A stretch of 64,000 nt of DNA from the sequence record ON529850.1. One strand, written 5' to 3'. Numbering within the stretch: the stretch's first letter is position 1; every line of letters starts with the position of its first letter. Of the stretch, positions 42,510-48,667 are shown one piece after another. The notes under the pieces were generated by a model. It searched no databases. It had not been told where the DNA came from and was given only the letters and a program-made list of their open reading frames with translations. A program made the translations under genes and the position numbers.

Positions 42510-42592
42510 TGGCGCCCTGGGTCTGATTCGAACAGACCTTCTCAACTCCTGCTACGGCTACTGGTTTCGTAGACCAGCCCGGTTACCAGGGC
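42510..42592 (-). tRNA. tRNA-Arg(ACG), D-armless with a 23-nt variable region
   Basis: Acceptor GCCCUGG/CCAGGGC, CUGGU-CUACGAA-ACCAG, GUCUG-UUCGAAU-CAGAC, CCA; only 8 nt where the D-arm should be. Confidence 0.7.
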
Positions 42593-42622
42593 GTGTTGAC
42601 GATCACACTTCGTCAGTATAAA

Positions 42623-43109: not shown

Positions 43110-43123
43110 ACACAGGAAAGGTG

Positions 43124-43198
43124 TGGCCCACTCGGGAGCGCTCGCATCTCCGTCTCGGGGATTTCACTCCCGCGCTACTCTATCTCAGCTACGAGTGG
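43124..43198 (-). tRNA. tRNA-Phe(GAA), atypical T-arm
   Basis: Loop GUGAAAU; CCACUCG/CGAGUGG; T-loop UGCGAGC; CCA. Confidence 0.72.
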
Positions 43199-43716: not shown

Positions 43717-44259
43717 TCATCCGAGACGGACGCTCCGACGATGCGACGCGAACTTCTTCAAAAGCATGGAACGCTTCAACGAGGAGACCCGATCGATGTT
43801 GCGGATTCCGTCAAGATGATCCAGCTCATGCTGGATGCAGATCGCCTTGTATCCGGACCCGTAAAGGGTCTGGCGCTCACCCTGGACGTCGCTGTATTCG
43901 ACCGTCACCTCGCGGTGGCGGCTGACGTCGAAGAAGACGCCTGGCATGGACAGGCAGCCCTCCGGAAGCGACACCATGTCGTCCGACCGATCGATGATGA
44001 CGGGATTGATCAGCACCAGCTTGGCAAGGCCCGGCAACATGCTTTGGGTCGGCAGCGGACCATTGGGAAGATCAAGCATGGTGAACATCCGCACCGGAAC
44101 GCCCACCTGAACCGCCGCCAGGCCCGCGCCGTCCGCCGTCAGCATGGTGTGCAGCATGTCGTGCGCCAGCGTGAGGAGGTCTTCATCGATCTCGGTGATT
44201 TCGGTCGAGACCTGACGCATCAACGGATCAGTGCACGGCAGGATTTGACGAAGCGCCAT
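43717..44259 (-). CDS. def: Peptide deformylase
   Basis: All three motifs: GAGLAAVQVG, EGCLS, QHELDHLDG. Confidence 0.96.
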   Translation of the reverse strand: MALRQILPCTDPLMRQVSTEITEIDEDLLTLAHDMLHTMLTADGAGLAAVQVGVPVRMFTMLDLPNGPLPTQSMLPGLAKLVLINPVIIDRSDDMVSLPEGCLSMPGVFFDVSRHREVTVEYSDVQGERQTLYGSGYKAICIQHELDHLDGIRNIDRVSSLKRSMLLKKFASHRRSVRLG

Positions 44260-44498
44260 CAGGTCAAGGTCCCCATGCCGCCGGCAGTGGTGGTGCGACC
44301 ATCCCGCCAGCGCCCCACCAGACTGACCAAATGGTCCGAGCGCATCTCCAGCTCCTCCAGGACGTCAAGCGCTTGCATCAAAGCCACGCGCGCGTCTTCC
44401 AGGCCGATGTTCTGGAGCTGGACGAGACGGCCCCCGACCATGACCTGATAGCCATGATACGGGGGCGTGCCGGCCGATGCGTTATCGGCGTCGGGCAT
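44259..44498 (-). CDS. Hypothetical protein
   Basis: Stop/start coupled to both neighbours. Confidence 0.6.
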   Translation of the reverse strand: MPDADNASAGTPPYHGYQVMVGGRLVQLQNIGLEDARVALMQALDVLEELEMRSDHLVSLVGRWRDGRTTTAGGMGTLT

Positions 44499-44788
44499 CA
44501 GACTTCACCGAGCGCCGACATATACAGGTCCAGGATGGCGTCTTCTTCCTGACGCTTGGCCTTGTCCTGCTTACGCAGGCGGATGACCTTACGCAGGATT
44601 TTGACGTCGTAGCCCTCGCCCTTGGCCTCGGCGAAGACCTCCTTCATGTCCGCCATGACGGCCTGCTTATCCTCTTCGAGTCGCTCCAGGCGCTCGATGA
44701 TGGAACGCAGACGACCCTGGGCCGAAGAGGTCAGAGCGTCGGCGTTCGTGAAGGTGGTGTCGCCGTCGGTCGTGGTGGGGTGAATCAT
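44498..44788 (-). CDS. gapR: GapR (DUF2312/UPF0335) nucleoid-associated protein
   Basis: LRSIIER.ERLEE.K....D.KEVFAEAK..GYD.KILR.VI.LRK.D...R.EE.A.LDLY..ALG. Confidence 0.93.
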   Translation of the reverse strand: MIHPTTTDGDTTFTNADALTSSAQGRLRSIIERLERLEEDKQAVMADMKEVFAEAKGEGYDVKILRKVIRLRKQDKAKRQEEDAILDLYMSALGEV

Positions 44789-44809: not shown

Positions 44810-45034
44810 TCACTGAGTGACAAGGAAATGAAGAATCGCCAGAAGATCGCGATCGACACGCGGGTCTTGCGCCTTCTGTTCGATGATGCGCAGGGCAGCC
44901 TTTCGCCGTGCGACCTGTCGGCCCACAACTATATTGCCATGCTGTTCTATGGCGTTTTCCAACTCTTCCGGGTCGACATAGGTGGAAATCGGATCGCCAT
45001 ATTTGCGGGCGCCGGGAAAGCGAAACTCAGTCAT
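44810..45034 (-). CDS. Hypothetical protein
   Basis: Start MTEFRF at 45034 with GGAGGAGG RBS. Confidence 0.6.
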   Translation of the reverse strand: MTEFRFPGARKYGDPISTYVDPEELENAIEQHGNIVVGRQVARRKAALRIIEQKAQDPRVDRDLLAILHFLVTQ

Positions 45035-45176: not shown

Positions 45177-45475
45177 GCTTCACCGGGGCGTGCGGCGTAG
45201 GGCGCGAAGGTGAAGTGATTGGGCGCCGCGACCGGCGGCAGATCATCGCCCGTGATCGGGCGGATGAAAAAGCGCATCAGCGCATTGTCGACGTTCTGCC
45301 AGGACGCCGCCTTCCATTCATCGCGAGCCGCTTCCCAGGTGGGAAAGACGCCCCGAACCACGACGGCCTGCGGATTACGAAACGCCGCCTGGAACGTCTC
45401 CTTGTCTCGGGCGGGGTCCGTGACGGCCAAGTCCGCCATCTCTCCACCGTAGACAGAATAACCGCAGACGCACAT
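45173..45475 (-). CDS. DUF4170-like protein
   Basis: VYGGE...D......VV.GVFP.W.AA...W.A.....VDNA.MRFFI pattern typical of alphaproteobacteria. Confidence 0.72.
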   Translation of the reverse strand: MCVCGYSVYGGEMADLAVTDPARDKETFQAAFRNPQAVVVRGVFPTWEAARDEWKAASWQNVDNALMRFFIRPITGDDLPPVAAPNHFTFAPYAARPGEA

Positions 45476-46239
45476 CAGCCGATCTCCACGATCAAATTGG
45501 GGTCGAAGTTCGGGTTCAACTCGTGCCCGATATAGCCGCGCGGATTGGTCAGCACGCGCGTCTTGCCGATCTGGTAGTCGCTGGAATCGTGCATGTGCCC
45601 GTGAACCCACAGGTCCGGTTCATACTCCAGGATCAGCGGCTCCAGGCGGGACGCATAGCAGGGGTTGAGTTCGCTGCCCCGATAACGGGGATGGCTGGAC
45701 CGCTCCGAGGGCGCATGGTGGGTCACCACCACGGTCGGACCGTCATGCGACAGGCGCAGTTGCTCACGCAAGAAGAAGACGCTGCGCGTATGCAGCGACA
45801 AAACCGCTTCAGGGGTGAGCAGGCGCATCGGTTCGGTTTCGATCTGCCGGTAGTCCGTCATGCCGCGCCTGGCCGCCATCATCGACAGATACTGGGTGCC
45901 GTAGAGATTGAAATCCGTCCAAAGGGTCGCGCCCAGGAACCGCACGCCGTCGATCACGAGCGCCTCGTCATCCAGAACGTGAACCGAAGACCCCAGCTCG
46001 ACCGCCTTGGCCTTCATTTTCTCGATGTGGCGTTTGATCCGACGCTTGCCGTAGAACTCGTGATTGCCGGGAACGTAGACGACCGGAACGCCAGGAAAAT
46101 GGCGATCCGCCCAGATCACGCCCACAACACCCGTGGCGGCGTCGCCAGCCAGGACCAGCACATCGCAAGGCGCCGGCGTGTAGTCGCGGCCCATGCCGCC
46201 GAACTCCAGGTGCAGGTCGCTCAGAATGTTGATGCGCAC
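45475..46239 (-). CDS. Calcineurin-like metallophosphoesterase
   Basis: SDLH, LAGD, GNHE, VTHH, WVHGH.H, NPRGY motifs. Confidence 0.93.
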   Translation of the reverse strand: MRINILSDLHLEFGGMGRDYTPAPCDVLVLAGDAATGVVGVIWADRHFPGVPVVYVPGNHEFYGKRRIKRHIEKMKAKAVELGSSVHVLDDEALVIDGVRFLGATLWTDFNLYGTQYLSMMAARRGMTDYRQIETEPMRLLTPEAVLSLHTRSVFFLREQLRLSHDGPTVVVTHHAPSERSSHPRYRGSELNPCYASRLEPLILEYEPDLWVHGHMHDSSDYQIGKTRVLTNPRGYIGHELNPNFDPNLIVEIG

Positions 46240-46256: not shown

Positions 46257-46375
46257 TGGAGCGGGTGGGAAGACTTGAACTTCCGCCTCCGGGTTAGCGA
46301 CCCGGCACTCCTGATCTCGGCCGAGACCCGCAACCCGGTTCGGCCGAACCTGCTGCGCCCTAGAGCTTCACCCGC
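46257..46375 (-). tRNA. 119-nt tRNA-like RNA: Gly-type acceptor, GCU (Ser) anticodon, 52-nt D-loop insertion
   Basis: GCGGGUG/CACCCGC, U73, CCA; CCGGG-UCGCUAA-CCCGG; GGAAG-UUCAAGU-CUUCC; short variable loop. Confidence 0.72.
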
Positions 46376-46379
46376 ATAA

Positions 46380-46610
46380 GGCGGCAGGAGTTTTAAAGGT
46401 GATGCGTCACCGGGCAAGCCCCCTGCCAGAAACCCCGTCTCCGCTTTTGTGAGGTCCAGAGACGAACGACCCTTCAAAGGCTCACATGGCACGACGTCGT
46501 CTCACGCGCTCCAGGCGTAGTCGCCCGAAACCGCAAGCCCGAGAGGTGGTGCGCGATGGTATCGCCTTCCCGAGGCGACGCCTTGCGACGCCGCGATCTT
46601 GTGTGGGGAT
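46380..46610 (-). ncRNA. Candidate structured RNA (~230 nt) upstream of the 119-nt tRNA
   Basis: Follows terminator 46647-46674 and TTGACG (46638-46633); helices UCGCC/GGCGA, UGUGAG/CUCACA, GGCAGGGG/CUCCUGCC, GGUGA/UCACC. Confidence 0.45.
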
Positions 46611-46646
46611 TACTGGCACTGTTCGACACGGGCGTCAACAAAGAAA

Positions 46647-46674
46647 AACGCCCCGGCGTTTCGGCCGGGGCGTT
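46647..46674 (-). terminator. Intrinsic terminator
   Basis: aacgccccggc/gccggggcgtt followed by tttcttt on the minus strand. Confidence 0.85.
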
Positions 46675-46676
46675 CT

Positions 46677-46994
46677 TCAGAGGTTCATCATCCACTGCTT
46701 GCGGTAGCGCGTGAAATCCTTCCAGGATTTGCCGGCGCGGCGGGACGCCATGATGTCGTCCCAGGAGGACGGCAGATGCTTCCGGTTCCCCCGCACGGAG
46801 ACGACACGATCATGGACGTCACCGGCGTTTCGACGGCGTTCCTGCATGGTGCGCGGATGCCGGAAATACTGCCGCCAGACGTGGCGGAACTCGCGGCAAC
46901 GCAGAGGATCGCCCTGGACCCCGCCGTAGTAATAGGTCCAGCAGCCGATCCACAGAAATCCGTGGTGGGTGATGCGTTGGAATTGGGGCTTCAA
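46677..46994 (-). CDS. Hypothetical phage protein
   Basis: R.P.T.QERR...R..R..LPSSWDD.......KSWK...RKQW; followed by a terminator. Confidence 0.75.
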   Translation of the reverse strand: MKPQFQRITHHGFLWIGCWTYYYGGVQGDPLRCREFRHVWRQYFRHPRTMQERRRNAGDVHDRVVSVRGNRKHLPSSWDDIMASRRAGKSWKDFTRYRKQWMMNL

Positions 46995-47097: not shown

Positions 47098-47186
47098 TGG
47101 CGGATGGGGCAGGGATCGAACCCGCGTAACCCTCTCGGGTGTCGACCGCTTAGCAAGCGGCTGCCTTACCTCTCGGCCACCCATCC
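47098..47186 (-). tRNA. tRNA-Ser(GCU)
   Basis: Loop UUGCUAA; long variable arm; G73; CCA. Confidence 0.93.
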
Positions 47187-47193
47187 GTGGGTG

Positions 47194-47278
47194 TGGCGGT
47201 GAACCAGGGAATCGAACCCTCAACCTTGCGGTCGGCTACGGTTTTCAAGGCCGCTTGTCCCCATGGACGCTGCTCACC
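47194..47278 (-). tRNA. tRNA-Ser(UGA), allo-tRNA-like D-arm and 4-bp T-stem
   Basis: Loop CUUGAAA; D-arm GUCC-AUGG-GGAC; AGGG-UUCGAUU-CCCU; CCA. Confidence 0.82.
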
Positions 47279-47285
47279 ATAAAGG

Positions 47286-47380: not shown

Positions 47381-47598
47381 TGGTGGAGGCGAGGGGATTC
47401 GAACCCCCGTAGACGCCGAACCCCCGCATTACCAGGGGCCGATCTTCGGTTTAGAACGCGTGTGCCGCTCTGACCATCTTCCGCAGGCCAGGTGGTCTAT
47501 CGTAACGACCCCGTCGATCGGTTGCCTCTGCGCCCCGGTTTTACCCGGACCGTTATCCTGTTCCACGGTGCTCATGCCGAAACCCGAGCGACGCCCCC
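47381..47598 (-). ncRNA. ssrA: Compact one-piece tmRNA-like RNA (218 nt)
   Basis: 5' GGGGGCG pairs with 3' CGCCUCC including G3.U70; A73; CCA; T-arm GGGG-UUCGAAU-CCCC; GGGUUUCGGC D-analogue; no anticodon arm. Confidence 0.78.
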
Positions 47599-47607
47599 GT
47601 GAAGAAA

Positions 47608-47695
47608 TGGAGGATGGTGTGGGATTCGAACCCACGGAACCTTGCGGTCCTCCGGCTTTCGAAACCGGTGCGATCGGCCACTCCGCCAACCATCC
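47608..47695 (-). tRNA. tRNA-Ser(CGA)
   Basis: Loop UUCGAAA; long variable arm; U73; CCA. Confidence 0.9.
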
Positions 47696-48580: not shown

Positions 48581-48667
48581 TGGAGGATGTGGTGGGACTC
48601 GAACCCACGATGGACTTTCGTCAGAGGATTAAGAGCCCTCCCCTCTCGCCGCTGAGGTGACACATCC
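48581..48667 (-). tRNA. tRNA-Lys(CUU) with a variable arm
   Basis: Loop CUCUUAA; arm GAC-GAAA-GUC; U73; CCA. Confidence 0.85.

What the first reader, a model, noticed from the sequence alone, without database searches (positions are those of the whole stretch)
46257..46375. 119-nt tRNA with glycine acceptor identity, a serine anticodon and two GGCC-loop hairpins in the D-loop
Seen: G1-C72, C2-G71, G3-C70 and U73, as in the two tRNA-Gly genes of this window; anticodon GCU (one change from Gly GCC); C33; no long variable arm. The 52-nt D-loop insert holds two palindromic hairpins (GGUUC-GGCC-GAACC, GUCUC-GGCC-GAGAU) with self-complementary loops. A canonical Ser(GCU) exists separately at 47098. 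Known: SerRS needs the long variable arm; GlyRS reads the acceptor pairs, U73 and C35/C36. Inference: a Gly-for-Ser mistranslating tRNA, a non-ribosomal glycyl donor, or a decoy; the loops could kiss or dimerise.
Basis: partly seen in the sequence, partly recalled or inferred. Interest (0 to 1): 0.8.

Follow-up and report, generated by a model that had tools for sequence, protein, structure and literature searches.

The report
Phage tRNA-like RNA with D-loop crossbar
A previously unannotated, conserved tRNA-shaped RNA gene of nine giant Caulobacter and Brevundimonas phages carries two extra hairpins in its D-loop whose tips stay complementary to each other. It looks like a tRNA mimic rather than a decoding, mistranslating tRNA.

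Summary
On the minus strand at 46375..46257 of Brevundimonas phage Gurke lies a 119-nt cloverleaf with these features:
- a 7-bp acceptor stem, U73 and an encoded CCA
- a canonical T arm
- a 5-bp anticodon stem with loop U-C-G-C-U-A-A
- a 4-nt variable region
- a 52-nt D-loop holding two hairpins, H1 (29 nt) and H2 (16 nt).

No annotation and no tRNA finder reports it.

It is a real gene. The same RNA sits at the same place in nine phages of three lineages (Gurke/Kikimora; Domovoi group; CcrColossus/CcrPW). Compensatory changes occur in the acceptor stem, T stem, H1 and H2.

The comparison speaks against the Gly-for-Ser mistranslation idea:
- the anticodon is GCU in the Brevundimonas phages but GUU in the Caulobacter phages
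- pair 1:72 is G-C or A-U
- position 33 is C, G, C or A, never U
- U8, A14 and A21 are replaced by A8, U14 and G21.

The hairpin tips stay Watson-Crick complementary to each other over 6-8 nt in every lineage. In the Domovoi group the two tips are complementary but not identical. This supports tip-to-tip RNA pairing, probably between molecules.

Best reading: a new kind of non-decoding tRNA mimic. Its biological role is not known.

The parts
46257..46375 (-). The 119-nt tRNA-like RNA, from G1 at 46375 to the encoded CCA at 46259-46257
   Evidence: Read directly. It is conserved at full length in 9 phages. Covariance model R1 scores it 122.6 bits, against at most 41 bits for ordinary tRNAs of the window.
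46369..46375 (-). Acceptor stem, 5' strand GCGGGUG. It pairs with 46261-46267 (CACCCGC). U73 is at 46260.
   Evidence: Seven Watson-Crick pairs. G1-C72 becomes A1-U72 in CcrColossus and CcrPW, and G5-C68 becomes A5-U68 in CcrPW; both are compensatory changes.
46358..46368 (-). A8, A9, the D-stem 5' strand GCUC (46363-46366) and UAGGG (46358-46362), which holds the likely G18 G19
   Evidence: The block UGARGCUCUAGGG is invariant in all four distinct sequences. A8, U14 and G21 stand where tRNAs have U8, A14 and A21.
46329..46357 (-). Hairpin H1 (29 nt): 6 bp, an internal loop, 5 bp, and the loop GGCC
   Evidence: It has the same length in the Domovoi group but is only about 45% identical there. 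Four of its pairs changed on both sides and stayed paired.
46313..46328 (-). Hairpin H2 (16 nt): 6 bp and the loop GGCC
   Evidence: Two compensatory and two one-sided changes against the Domovoi group. Its apex is complementary to the H1 apex in every lineage.
46307..46310 (-). D-stem 3' strand GAGU
   Evidence: G10-U25 in Gurke is G10-C25 in the Domovoi group.
46289..46305 (-). Anticodon arm CCGGG / U-C-G-C-U-A-A / CCCGG. The anticodon GCU is at 46298-46296 and C33 at 46299.
   Evidence: The stem is invariant. Only positions 33 (C, G, C, A) and 35 (C or U) vary among the phages.
46268..46284 (-). T arm GGAAG-UUCAAGU-CUUCC
   Evidence: Canonical T-loop. Stem pairs 51-63 and 52-62 covary among the lineages.
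46376..46427 (-). Conserved structured leader. An outer stem (GGCAGGGG/CUCCUGCC) encloses an inner hairpin, followed by CCUUAU directly before G1.
   Evidence: The same architecture appears in the Domovoi group and in CcrColossus/CcrPW with changed stem sequences. CUUAU is invariant, with U at -1.
46609..46638 (-). Promoter-like block: TTGACG (46638-46633), 18 nt, AGTAAT (46614-46609)
   Evidence: TTGAC[AG] and CAGTAATC are conserved in the Gurke, Domovoi-group and CcrColossus/CcrPW sequences read. This was read by eye. The consensus scan did not flag it.
46643..46678 (-). Intrinsic terminator of the upstream gene, which sets the 5' limit of the transcription unit
   Evidence: A 15-bp stem followed by a T run.
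45475..46239 (-). Downstream gene for a metallophosphoesterase. Its start codon lies 18 nt after the CCA. It is the synteny anchor for the RNA.
   Evidence: phrog_1649, E 1e-54. The same neighbour is found in all 9 phages.

Best explanation
This is a real, selectively maintained phage gene for a non-decoding tRNA mimic.

How it is made (inferred):
- It is probably transcribed from its own promoter-like block about 230 nt upstream, together with a structured leader.
- RNase P probably cuts after the conserved CUUAU (U at -1).
- The RNA ends in its encoded CCA.

What it looks like:
- Its acceptor, T and anticodon arms keep tRNA geometry, so it should fold into an L-shape and be handled by tRNA-binding enzymes.
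- The D-loop after G18-G19 (position 20, which faces the solvent in tRNA) is replaced by two hairpins.
- In the Brevundimonas-phage forms the hairpins follow each other with no linker. They probably stack into one rod attached to the elbow.

How it may act (inferred):
- The two rod tips are complementary to each other.
- The hairpins differ in length (11-12 against 6 bp) and point apart, so the tips most likely pair between molecules, giving dimers or chains, rather than within one molecule.
- It is not a Ser- or Asn-decoding tRNA and not a dedicated Gly-for-Ser mistranslator.
- Its target (a tRNA-binding protein, a defence nuclease or an aminoacyl-transfer enzyme) is unknown.

Shown here: conservation, covariation, tip complementarity, and loss of the decoding hallmarks. 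Inferred: transcription, processing, stacking, intermolecular pairing, and any action in trans.
For: Distribution:
- The RNA is present at the same place, upstream of the metallophosphoesterase gene, in 9 phages of 3 lineages. It is 119-126 nt long and unannotated in all.

Conservation:
- Gurke against Domovoi: the core is 67/74 identical and the insert only 20/45, yet all 38 pairs are canonical in each of the 4 distinct sequences.
- RNAalifold on the gapless Gurke/Domovoi pair recovers the cloverleaf with H1 and H2, with 7 compensatory pairs.
- A1-U72 and A5-U68 are compensatory changes in the Caulobacter phages.
- Conservation stops sharply after the CCA.

Decoding hallmarks lost:
- Anticodon GCU against GUU.
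- Position 33 is C, G, C or A.
- A8, U14 and G21 are invariant.
- There is no long variable arm and no G73, as bacterial Ser identity requires. There is no G73 for Asn either (identity table of PMC9976931).
- Each phage read here has a canonical tRNA with the same anticodon.

Hairpin tips:
- Watson-Crick complementarity between the H1 and H2 tips is 8, 8, 6 and 8 nt. Shuffles of H2 reach this in 0.5%, 0.24%, 6.5% and 0.3% of trials. Duplex energies run from -8 to -15 kcal/mol.
- In the Domovoi group the bases flanking the shared CGCG are complementary (CA/UG, AA/UU), not identical.

Other points:
- The cloverleaf with two hairpins is the MFE or lies within 1 kcal/mol of it.
- It is not a dispersed repeat: TCGGCCGA occurs 6 times in the window against 3.9 expected.
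Against: - There are no expression, end-mapping or charging data.
- Only three lineages (four distinct sequences) are known, so the covariation statistics are thin.
- The palindromic tips of two lineages also fit other models: a shared protein site, or a DNA palindrome.
- Four-nt loops can pair fully only if their closing pairs open.
- The invariant anticodon stem and the conserved G34, U36, A37 and A38 show that something reads the anticodon arm. An aminoacyl-tRNA synthetase or the ribosome is not excluded.
- In Gurke the RNA lies 18 nt from a start codon, so a purely cis role in the mRNA is possible.
- In CcrColossus and CcrPW the UAGGG can pair with CCUUA/CCUA. That would sequester G18-G19.
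Confidence: 0.55

Rival explanations
1. It is a cis-acting part of the mRNA. The tRNA shape serves only as an RNase P / 3'-end processing site, or as a stabiliser, that defines the 5' end of the operon mRNA (metallophosphoesterase, GapR, peptide deformylase). It has no function as a free RNA.
For: It lies between a promoter-like block and the operon, 18 nt before the start codon in Gurke. The synteny is constant in 9 phages. The leader is structured and conserved.
Against: A processing signal needs neither an invariant anticodon arm, nor an encoded CCA, nor two covarying hairpins with complementary tips. The distance to the start codon is not conserved: 18 nt in Gurke, and about 125-130 nt in the other lineages if their start codon is placed by homology. 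The trailer is not conserved either.
Confidence: 0.15
2. It is a decoy or trap for a host tRNA-targeting defence (an anticodon nuclease, an acceptor-end modifying toxin or similar). The mimic is bound in place of host tRNA.
For: tRNA-targeting defences, and phage tRNAs that counter them, are documented (papers listed, for example PMC10264068 and PMC11464382). The RNA keeps the tRNA surfaces but not the decoding hallmarks. The anticodon loop differs between phages of different host genera.
Against: No defence system or partner was identified. The known counter-defence tRNAs are canonical, functional tRNAs. Nothing explains the crossbar.
Confidence: 0.15
3. It is a chargeable tRNA that either decodes or donates. 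In one form it carries glycine (or another amino acid) and reads AGY. In the other it gives its aminoacyl group to a non-ribosomal acceptor.
For: U73, C2-G71 and G3-C70 are invariant. The Brevundimonas-phage forms also have G1-C72 and C35, which makes 5 of the 6 bacterial glycine determinants. The CCA is encoded and the T arm is canonical.
Against: C36 is absent everywhere. G1-C72 and C35 are lost in CcrColossus and CcrPW. The anticodon changes meaning between orthologues (Ser AGY against Asn AAY) with no matching change of identity elements. U33 is absent. An engineered large insert before G18 in the D-loop of E. coli tRNA-Tyr was not stably expressed (PMC5397188).
Confidence: 0.1
4. The 45-nt insert is an intervening sequence. 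It is either spliced out or excised without ligation, leaving a normal 74-nt tRNA or a two-piece tRNA.
For: Removing H1 and H2 leaves a normal 7-8-nt D-loop (UAGGGAG). Archaeal tRNAs can carry D-loop introns (PMC3695527). From memory: alphaproteobacterial tmRNA is matured into two pieces.
Against: There is no bulge-helix-bulge. Both hairpins lie wholly inside the insert, so no exon-intron helix exists. At 45-52 nt it is far too short for a group I intron. The product would still lack U33, U8 and A14 and would still have a mismatched identity. The insert is under structural selection that includes tip complementarity, which an excised spacer does not need.
Confidence: 0.07
5. It is a degenerating tRNA pseudogene, or a chance cloverleaf, with a palindromic DNA insertion.
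For: tRNA finders miss it. The Rfam score is marginal.
Against: It is conserved at full length in three lineages, with compensatory changes in five helices and a 90% identical core, while the flanking trailer is unalignable. The chance rate is about 0.02 per window.
Confidence: 0.03

Closest known systems
Canonical bacterial and phage elongator tRNA (Rfam RF00005), in particular tRNA-Gly and tRNA-Ser(GCU)
   Same: 7-bp acceptor stem, discriminator plus CCA, 4-5-bp D stem with a GG in the loop, 5-bp anticodon stem with a 7-nt loop, a 4-nt variable region, and a canonical T arm. It lies at the end of a tRNA gene array. Its acceptor end resembles that of tRNA-Gly.
   Different: The D-loop is 52-59 nt with two hairpins. 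U33, U8, A14 and A21 are all replaced. The anticodon differs between orthologues. No identity set is complete. ARAGORN does not find it, and Rfam finds it only through a false sub-reading.
YrlA / bacterial Y RNAs, tRNA mimics bound by Ro60 (Rfam RF02553; PMC4201824)
   Same: A non-coding RNA that mimics tRNA arms. The same phages encode a Ro60/TROVE protein, and CcrColossus has weak (sub-threshold) YrlA-like matches next to it.
   Different: The topology differs. In YrlA the 5' and 3' ends form the Ro60-binding stem and the acceptor-like stem is closed. Here the ends form an open acceptor stem with CCA, and a full anticodon arm is present. The gene lies 42 kb (CcrColossus) or about 75 kb (Gurke) from the Ro60 gene. 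The Rfam YrlA model does not match it.
   Same: Two loops of one RNA, or one palindromic loop, carry short G+C-rich complementary sequences. These pair between molecules, and they change in a coordinated way between strains.
   Different: There is no sequence or structural homology. Those RNAs are not tRNA-like. Here pairing between molecules is inferred only from sequence.
Stable 'species 1 and 2' RNAs of the phage T4 tRNA cluster, and the tRNA-like RNAs joined to hairpins of a murine gammaherpesvirus (from memory)
   Same: Virus-encoded RNAs of unknown or non-decoding function that are tRNA-shaped at the ends, encoded with or like tRNAs, and processed by tRNA enzymes.
   Different: In those RNAs the extra hairpins lie outside the cloverleaf, not in the D-loop. 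No homology was tested, because no sequences were at hand.
Archaeal tRNAs with non-canonical introns in the D-loop (PMC3695527, PMC3241643)
   Same: An extra segment interrupts the D-loop of an otherwise normal cloverleaf.
   Different: Those introns sit in a bulge-helix-bulge cut by the archaeal splicing endonuclease. No such motif is present here, and the host is a bacterium.

Membership tests
Elongator tRNA (decoding) | Cloverleaf with 7/4/5/5-bp stems, a 7-nt anticodon loop and a 7-nt T-loop | tested here: met
   All stems are fully paired in the 4 distinct sequences.
Elongator tRNA (decoding) | D-loop of about 7-11 nt | tested here: not met
   52 nt in the Brevundimonas phages, 58-59 nt in CcrPW and CcrColossus.
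Elongator tRNA (decoding) | Invariant U33, U8, A14 and A21 | tested here: not met
   Position 33 is C, G, C or A. A8, U14 and G21 are found in all forms.
Elongator tRNA (decoding) | The anticodon is conserved among orthologues and is consistent with the identity elements | tested here: not met
   GCU against GUU. U73 and the short variable region fit neither bacterial Ser (G73, long arm) nor Asn (G73).
Elongator tRNA (decoding) | Aminoacylated and used on the ribosome | not testable with these tools
   This needs charging assays and tRNA-seq.
Bacterial tRNA-Gly identity | U73, C2-G71 and G3-C70 | tested here: met
   Invariant in all nine. The identity set is taken from PMC9976931.
Bacterial tRNA-Gly identity | G1-C72 | tested here: inconclusive
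   Present in the 7 Brevundimonas phages. It is A1-U72 in CcrColossus and CcrPW.
Bacterial tRNA-Gly identity | C35 and C36 | tested here: not met
   C36 is U in all forms. C35 is present only in the Brevundimonas phages.
YrlA / Y RNA-like | Encoded next to a Ro60 (TROVE) gene | tested here: not met
   The Ro60 homologue lies at 107047-108456 in CcrColossus, against 64.9-65.2 kb for the RNA. In Gurke it lies at record 156238-157575, against about 232.3 kb for the RNA.
YrlA / Y RNA-like | Match to the Rfam YrlA model, with the ends forming the Ro60-binding stem | tested here: not met
   No YrlA hit on the element even at E up to 10. The ends form an acceptor stem with CCA.
Intron-containing tRNA | A bulge-helix-bulge at the exon-intron junctions, or a group I intron core | tested here: not met
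   By inspection of the structures, both hairpins lie inside the insert and no exon-intron helix exists. The insert is 45-52 nt. Rfam reports no intron family.
   Three different tip sequences, always complementary over 6-8 nt.
   This needs native gels, SEC-MALS, or SHAPE with compensatory loop mutants.

The most novel reading that the evidence does not exclude
The RNA is a self-associating tRNA mimic. The two stacked hairpins form a rod with a sticky, mutually complementary loop at each end, so that molecules join tip to tip into dimers or chains that display several tRNA-like bodies. Such an assembly could trap or concentrate a tRNA-binding factor during infection, for example a host defence nuclease, a synthetase, or the phage's own Ro60. 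This would be a viral RNA architecture and mode of action not described before.
Probability: 0.25. Interest if true: 0.85.

Novelty: new variant of a known kind. Interest (0 to 1): 0.6.

Why it matters
Phage tRNA arrays are usually read only as codon supplements or as spare parts against tRNA-cleaving defences. Here is a conserved member of such an array that keeps the tRNA shape but has lost the marks of decoding. It has gained a structured, covarying module at a place where tRNAs normally tolerate only a few extra bases.

Why this is useful:
- It is invisible to standard tRNA finders and is unannotated in all nine genomes. Similar RNAs may therefore be missed elsewhere.
- If the tip-to-tip pairing is real, it offers a natural example of a tRNA scaffold that assembles through loop-loop contacts.
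- CcrColossus infects a standard laboratory strain of Caulobacter, which makes it a tractable system for asking what tRNA mimics do in infection.

Tried and rejected
1. The Rfam 72-nt tRNA reading (46331..46260, 31.1 bits) is rejected. Its 5' acceptor strand is made of the H1/H2 boundary, it has a C-C mismatch at 7-66, and the relatives give only 16.9 and 25.4 bits with different false 5' halves.

2. Searches for more members found nothing new.
- Exact and gapped DNA patterns in viral contigs returned only CcrColossus and CcrPW.
- In metagenome contigs, 21 hits were returned; only two gave even a weak model match, and both proved to be chance on reading; the other 19 gave none.
- In one genome per species, 8 hits were returned, none called as a tRNA and none scoring like the element.
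- Model R1 and a descriptor scan were run over 57 viral loci that encode the neighbouring phosphoesterase; R1 alone was run over the phiCbK tRNA region. Neither found a new member.
- Phage Cr30 has the phosphoesterase in a compact coding block with no RNA.

3. Origin from a window tRNA was not shown. With the insert removed, the core has no close paralogue; the best matches are 65-77% identical over aligned length and include class II tRNAs.

4. A dispersed palindromic repeat or mobile mini-element is rejected. TCGGCCGA is not enriched.

5. The Ro60-adjacent Y RNA is rejected.

6. Pairing of the hairpin tips with the leader is rejected. By inspection, no matching palindrome occurs in the leaders.

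7. MAFFT alignments of the insert and of the leader across lineages (A2, A3) are not in structural register. I therefore tabulated pairs from per-sequence structures and used RNAalifold only on the gapless Gurke/Domovoi pair.

8. The literature searches found no description of this RNA.

Full report
ORIGIN OF THE WINDOW. The window is 100% identical to Brevundimonas phage vB_BpoS-Gurke (ON529850.1), a 321.5-kb phage of the Dolichocephalovirinae. Window position 45000 is record position 231000. The finding lies at the downstream end of a minus-strand tRNA array. ARAGORN tRNAs in the window. The finding sits directly upstream of a metallophosphoesterase gene. GenBank annotates nothing there.

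THE OBSERVATION. Read on the minus strand, 46375..46257 is a 119-nt cloverleaf, laid out as follows.
- Acceptor stem GCGGGUG/CACCCGC, then U73 and CCA.
- A8 and A9, then D stem GCUC/GAGU.
- A 52-nt D-loop made of UAGGG, hairpin H1 (29 nt: 6 bp, an internal loop, 5 bp, loop GGCC), hairpin H2 (16 nt: 6 bp, loop GGCC) and AG.
- G26, then anticodon stem CCGGG/CCCGG with loop U-C-G-C-U-A-A.
- Variable region AGGC.
- T arm GGAAG-UUCAAGU-CUUCC.

A descriptor for such a cloverleaf with a long D-loop hits once in the window, against 2 hits in 100 dinucleotide shuffles.

ARAGORN misses the gene. Rfam's tRNA model reports only a 72-nt sub-reading at 31.1 bits, which uses the H1/H2 boundary as a false acceptor strand. 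The relatives give 16.9 and 25.4 bits with other false 5' halves, so that reading is an artefact.

IT IS CONSERVED AND IT COVARIES. The same RNA lies at the same place in Kikimora (identical sequence) and in Domovoi, Papperlapapp, Kabachok, Marchewka and Bambus (one shared sequence, also 119 nt). It is also present in Caulobacter phages CcrColossus (126 nt) and CcrPW (125 nt). BLAST finds it in these nine phages only, with no annotated feature under any match.

Between Gurke and Domovoi the cloverleaf core is 67/74 identical and the 45-nt insert only 20/45. Even so, all 38 proposed pairs are standard pairs in each of the four distinct sequences. RNAalifold on the gapless Gurke/Domovoi pair recovers the cloverleaf and both hairpins on its own. 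It reports seven pairs changed on both sides: four in H1, two in H2 and one in the T stem.

The Caulobacter phages add A1-U72 for G1-C72, A5-U68 for G5-C68 (CcrPW), and further T-stem covariation. Conservation ends abruptly after the CCA, and the trailers of the three lineages cannot be aligned. The cloverleaf with two hairpins is the minimum-energy fold in Domovoi and lies within 1 kcal/mol of it in the others. This is a gene under selection for structure, not a pseudogene.

WHAT THE COMPARISON SAYS ABOUT DECODING.
- The anticodon is GCU (Ser, AGY) in the seven Brevundimonas phages but GUU (Asn, AAY) in CcrColossus and CcrPW.
- Position 33 is C, G, C or A, and never the U that makes the anticodon turn.
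- A8, U14 and G21 replace the near-universal U8, A14 and A21 in all forms.
- The RNA lacks the long variable arm and the G73 of bacterial Ser identity, and the G73 of Asn identity.
- Of the bacterial Gly set (U73, G1-C72, C2-G71, G3-C70, C35, C36), C36 is never present, and G1-C72 and C35 are lost in the Caulobacter phages (identity table of PMC9976931).
- Each phage read here also has a canonical tRNA with the same anticodon.

A tRNA whose anticodon changes meaning between orthologues, while the rest of the body stays fixed, is unlikely to be selected for decoding. A dedicated Gly-for-Ser mistranslator is therefore not supported.

On the other hand, the anticodon stem and G34, U36, A37 and A38 are invariant, so something does read this arm.

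THE TWO HAIRPINS. In tRNA, position 20 lies just after G18-G19 and faces the solvent. The insert starts exactly there. An engineered insert slightly earlier in the D-loop of E. coli tRNA-Tyr, before G18, was not stably expressed (PMC5397188). A conserved natural insert in the D-loop is therefore notable.

The tips of H1 and H2 are Watson-Crick complementary to each other in every lineage, although the sequences differ:
- Gurke: UCGGCCGA with UCGGCCGA
- Domovoi group: CACGCGAA with UUCGCGUG
- CcrColossus: AGCGCU with AGCGCU
- CcrPW: GAAGCGCU with AGCGCUUC.

The runs are 8, 8, 6 and 8 nt. Shuffles of H2 reach them in 0.5%, 0.24%, 6.5% and 0.3% of trials. The duplex energies are -14.5, -11.3, -8.3 and -15.4 kcal/mol.

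In two lineages the tips are the same palindrome. That would also fit a shared protein site. In the Domovoi group, however, the bases flanking the common CGCG are complementary (CA/UG, AA/UU) and not identical. This favours RNA-RNA pairing.

In the Brevundimonas-phage forms, H1 (11-12 layers) and H2 (6 bp) follow each other without a linker, so they should stack end to end with their loops pointing apart. Pairing within one molecule looks sterically unlikely, and pairing between molecules (dimers or chains) is the simplest reading. This step is inference. The motif is not a dispersed repeat.

TRANSCRIPTION UNIT. The parts run in this order along the minus strand.
- An intrinsic terminator of the upstream gene (46678..46643).
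- A block TTGACG-N18-AGTAAT (46638..46609). Its two halves are conserved in all three lineages.
- A poorly conserved stretch of about 170 nt.
- A conserved leader domain (46427..46383). Its outer stem encloses an inner hairpin, and both change sequence between lineages while keeping their pairing.
- The invariant CUUAU, with U at -1, immediately before G1.

From general knowledge of bacterial RNase P, a U at -1 and a 12-bp acceptor/T stack make a good substrate. Cleavage there is inferred, not shown.

Downstream lie the metallophosphoesterase (phrog_1649), small unknown genes, a GapR homologue and a peptide deformylase.

KNOWN FAMILIES.
- Y RNA-like tRNA mimics. CcrColossus is cited as carrying a Ro60 homologue and Y RNA-like RNAs (PMC12135203, which cites PMC4201824). 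I located its TROVE gene at 107047-108456, with three weak YrlA matches just upstream. All nine phages have the protein. That locus is 42 kb (CcrColossus) to about 75 kb (Gurke) away from the RNA. The element gives no YrlA match, and its topology is different.
- Intron-containing tRNAs. There is no bulge-helix-bulge, and the insert is far too short for a group I intron.
- Other Rfam families. None matches, apart from the false tRNA sub-reading already described.
- Wider searches found no further member. These were DNA patterns in viral, metagenome and genome collections, model R1 over 57 loci with the neighbouring gene, and the phiCbK tRNA region.

The family thus seems confined to the Colossus-like giant phages of Caulobacterales, or else it diverges too fast for exact patterns.

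VERDICT. The RNA is a new, conserved, structured tRNA mimic with a two-hairpin module in the D-loop. The mistranslation idea is not supported. The decoy and aminoacyl-donor ideas remain open.

The function is unknown. I commit to a free, RNase P-processed, CCA-ended, non-decoding mimic whose hairpin tips pair between molecules. My confidence is about 0.55 for the whole chain, and much higher (about 0.85) for the statement that it is a selected structured RNA gene.

The main weaknesses are that there are only three lineages and no expression data.

Noticed in passing
window 46376-46427 (minus strand): The leader directly upstream of the tRNA-like RNA is itself a conserved structured domain. An outer stem encloses an inner hairpin, with compensatory changes in three lineages. 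The motifs GACGGGG upstream, CUGAAAAC (UUUAAAAC in Gurke) inside, and CUUAU before G1 are conserved. No Rfam match.
   Followed up: partly
window 47194-47279 (minus strand): A class II tRNA-like gene with anticodon UGA (Ser) is missed by ARAGORN in Gurke. Rfam gives only a tRNA-Sec hit of 29.7 bits. The homologous gene in Domovoi is called and annotated as tRNA-Ser(UGA).
   Followed up: partly
window 47381-47598 (minus strand): A tmRNA-like match (Rfam RF00023, 31.7 bits, below the 47-bit threshold) lies between two tRNA-Ser genes. ARAGORN calls no tmRNA.
   Followed up: no
window 43121-43198 and 42510-42593 (minus strand): Two more unannotated tRNA-like genes with CCA ends. One has an odd anticodon and T region (R1 30 bits). 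The other looks like a tRNA-Arg(ACG) with an extra arm (Rfam tRNA-Sec 28.1 bits). CcrColossus has an extra 97-nt Arg(ACG) call (ARAGORN) and an annotated pseudo-tRNA in the corresponding array. The array therefore holds several non-canonical tRNAs.
   Followed up: partly
window 44498-44788 and 43717-44259 (minus strand): The operon downstream of the RNA encodes a homologue of the Caulobacter nucleoid-associated protein GapR (NF052541, 150 bits) and a peptide deformylase.
   Followed up: no
L100 37048-39448 (CcrColossus record 107047-109447): A TROVE/Ro60 gene has three weak YrlA-like matches upstream (42.3, 30.5 and 29.9 bits). One overlaps a feature annotated as a 68-nt tRNA-Gln. Homologues of the protein are in all nine phages that carry the tRNA-like RNA.
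   Followed up: partly
L099 2492-4579 (Caulobacter phage Cr30): A homologue of the neighbouring metallophosphoesterase (48% identity) lies two genes from an annotated RNA ligase. This hints that this phosphoesterase family may act on RNA ends.
   Followed up: no
L003-L007 about 1768-1879 (Domovoi group): The annotated metallophosphoesterase start lies 37 codons upstream of where homology to the Gurke and CcrColossus proteins begins. The annotated start may be too early, and the true gap between the RNA and the gene may be about 130 nt.
   Followed up: no
window 47608-47695 and 48581-48667 (minus strand): The phage tRNA-Ser(CGA) and tRNA-Lys(CUU) both carry U73 instead of the usual bacterial G73 and A73.
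   Followed up: no
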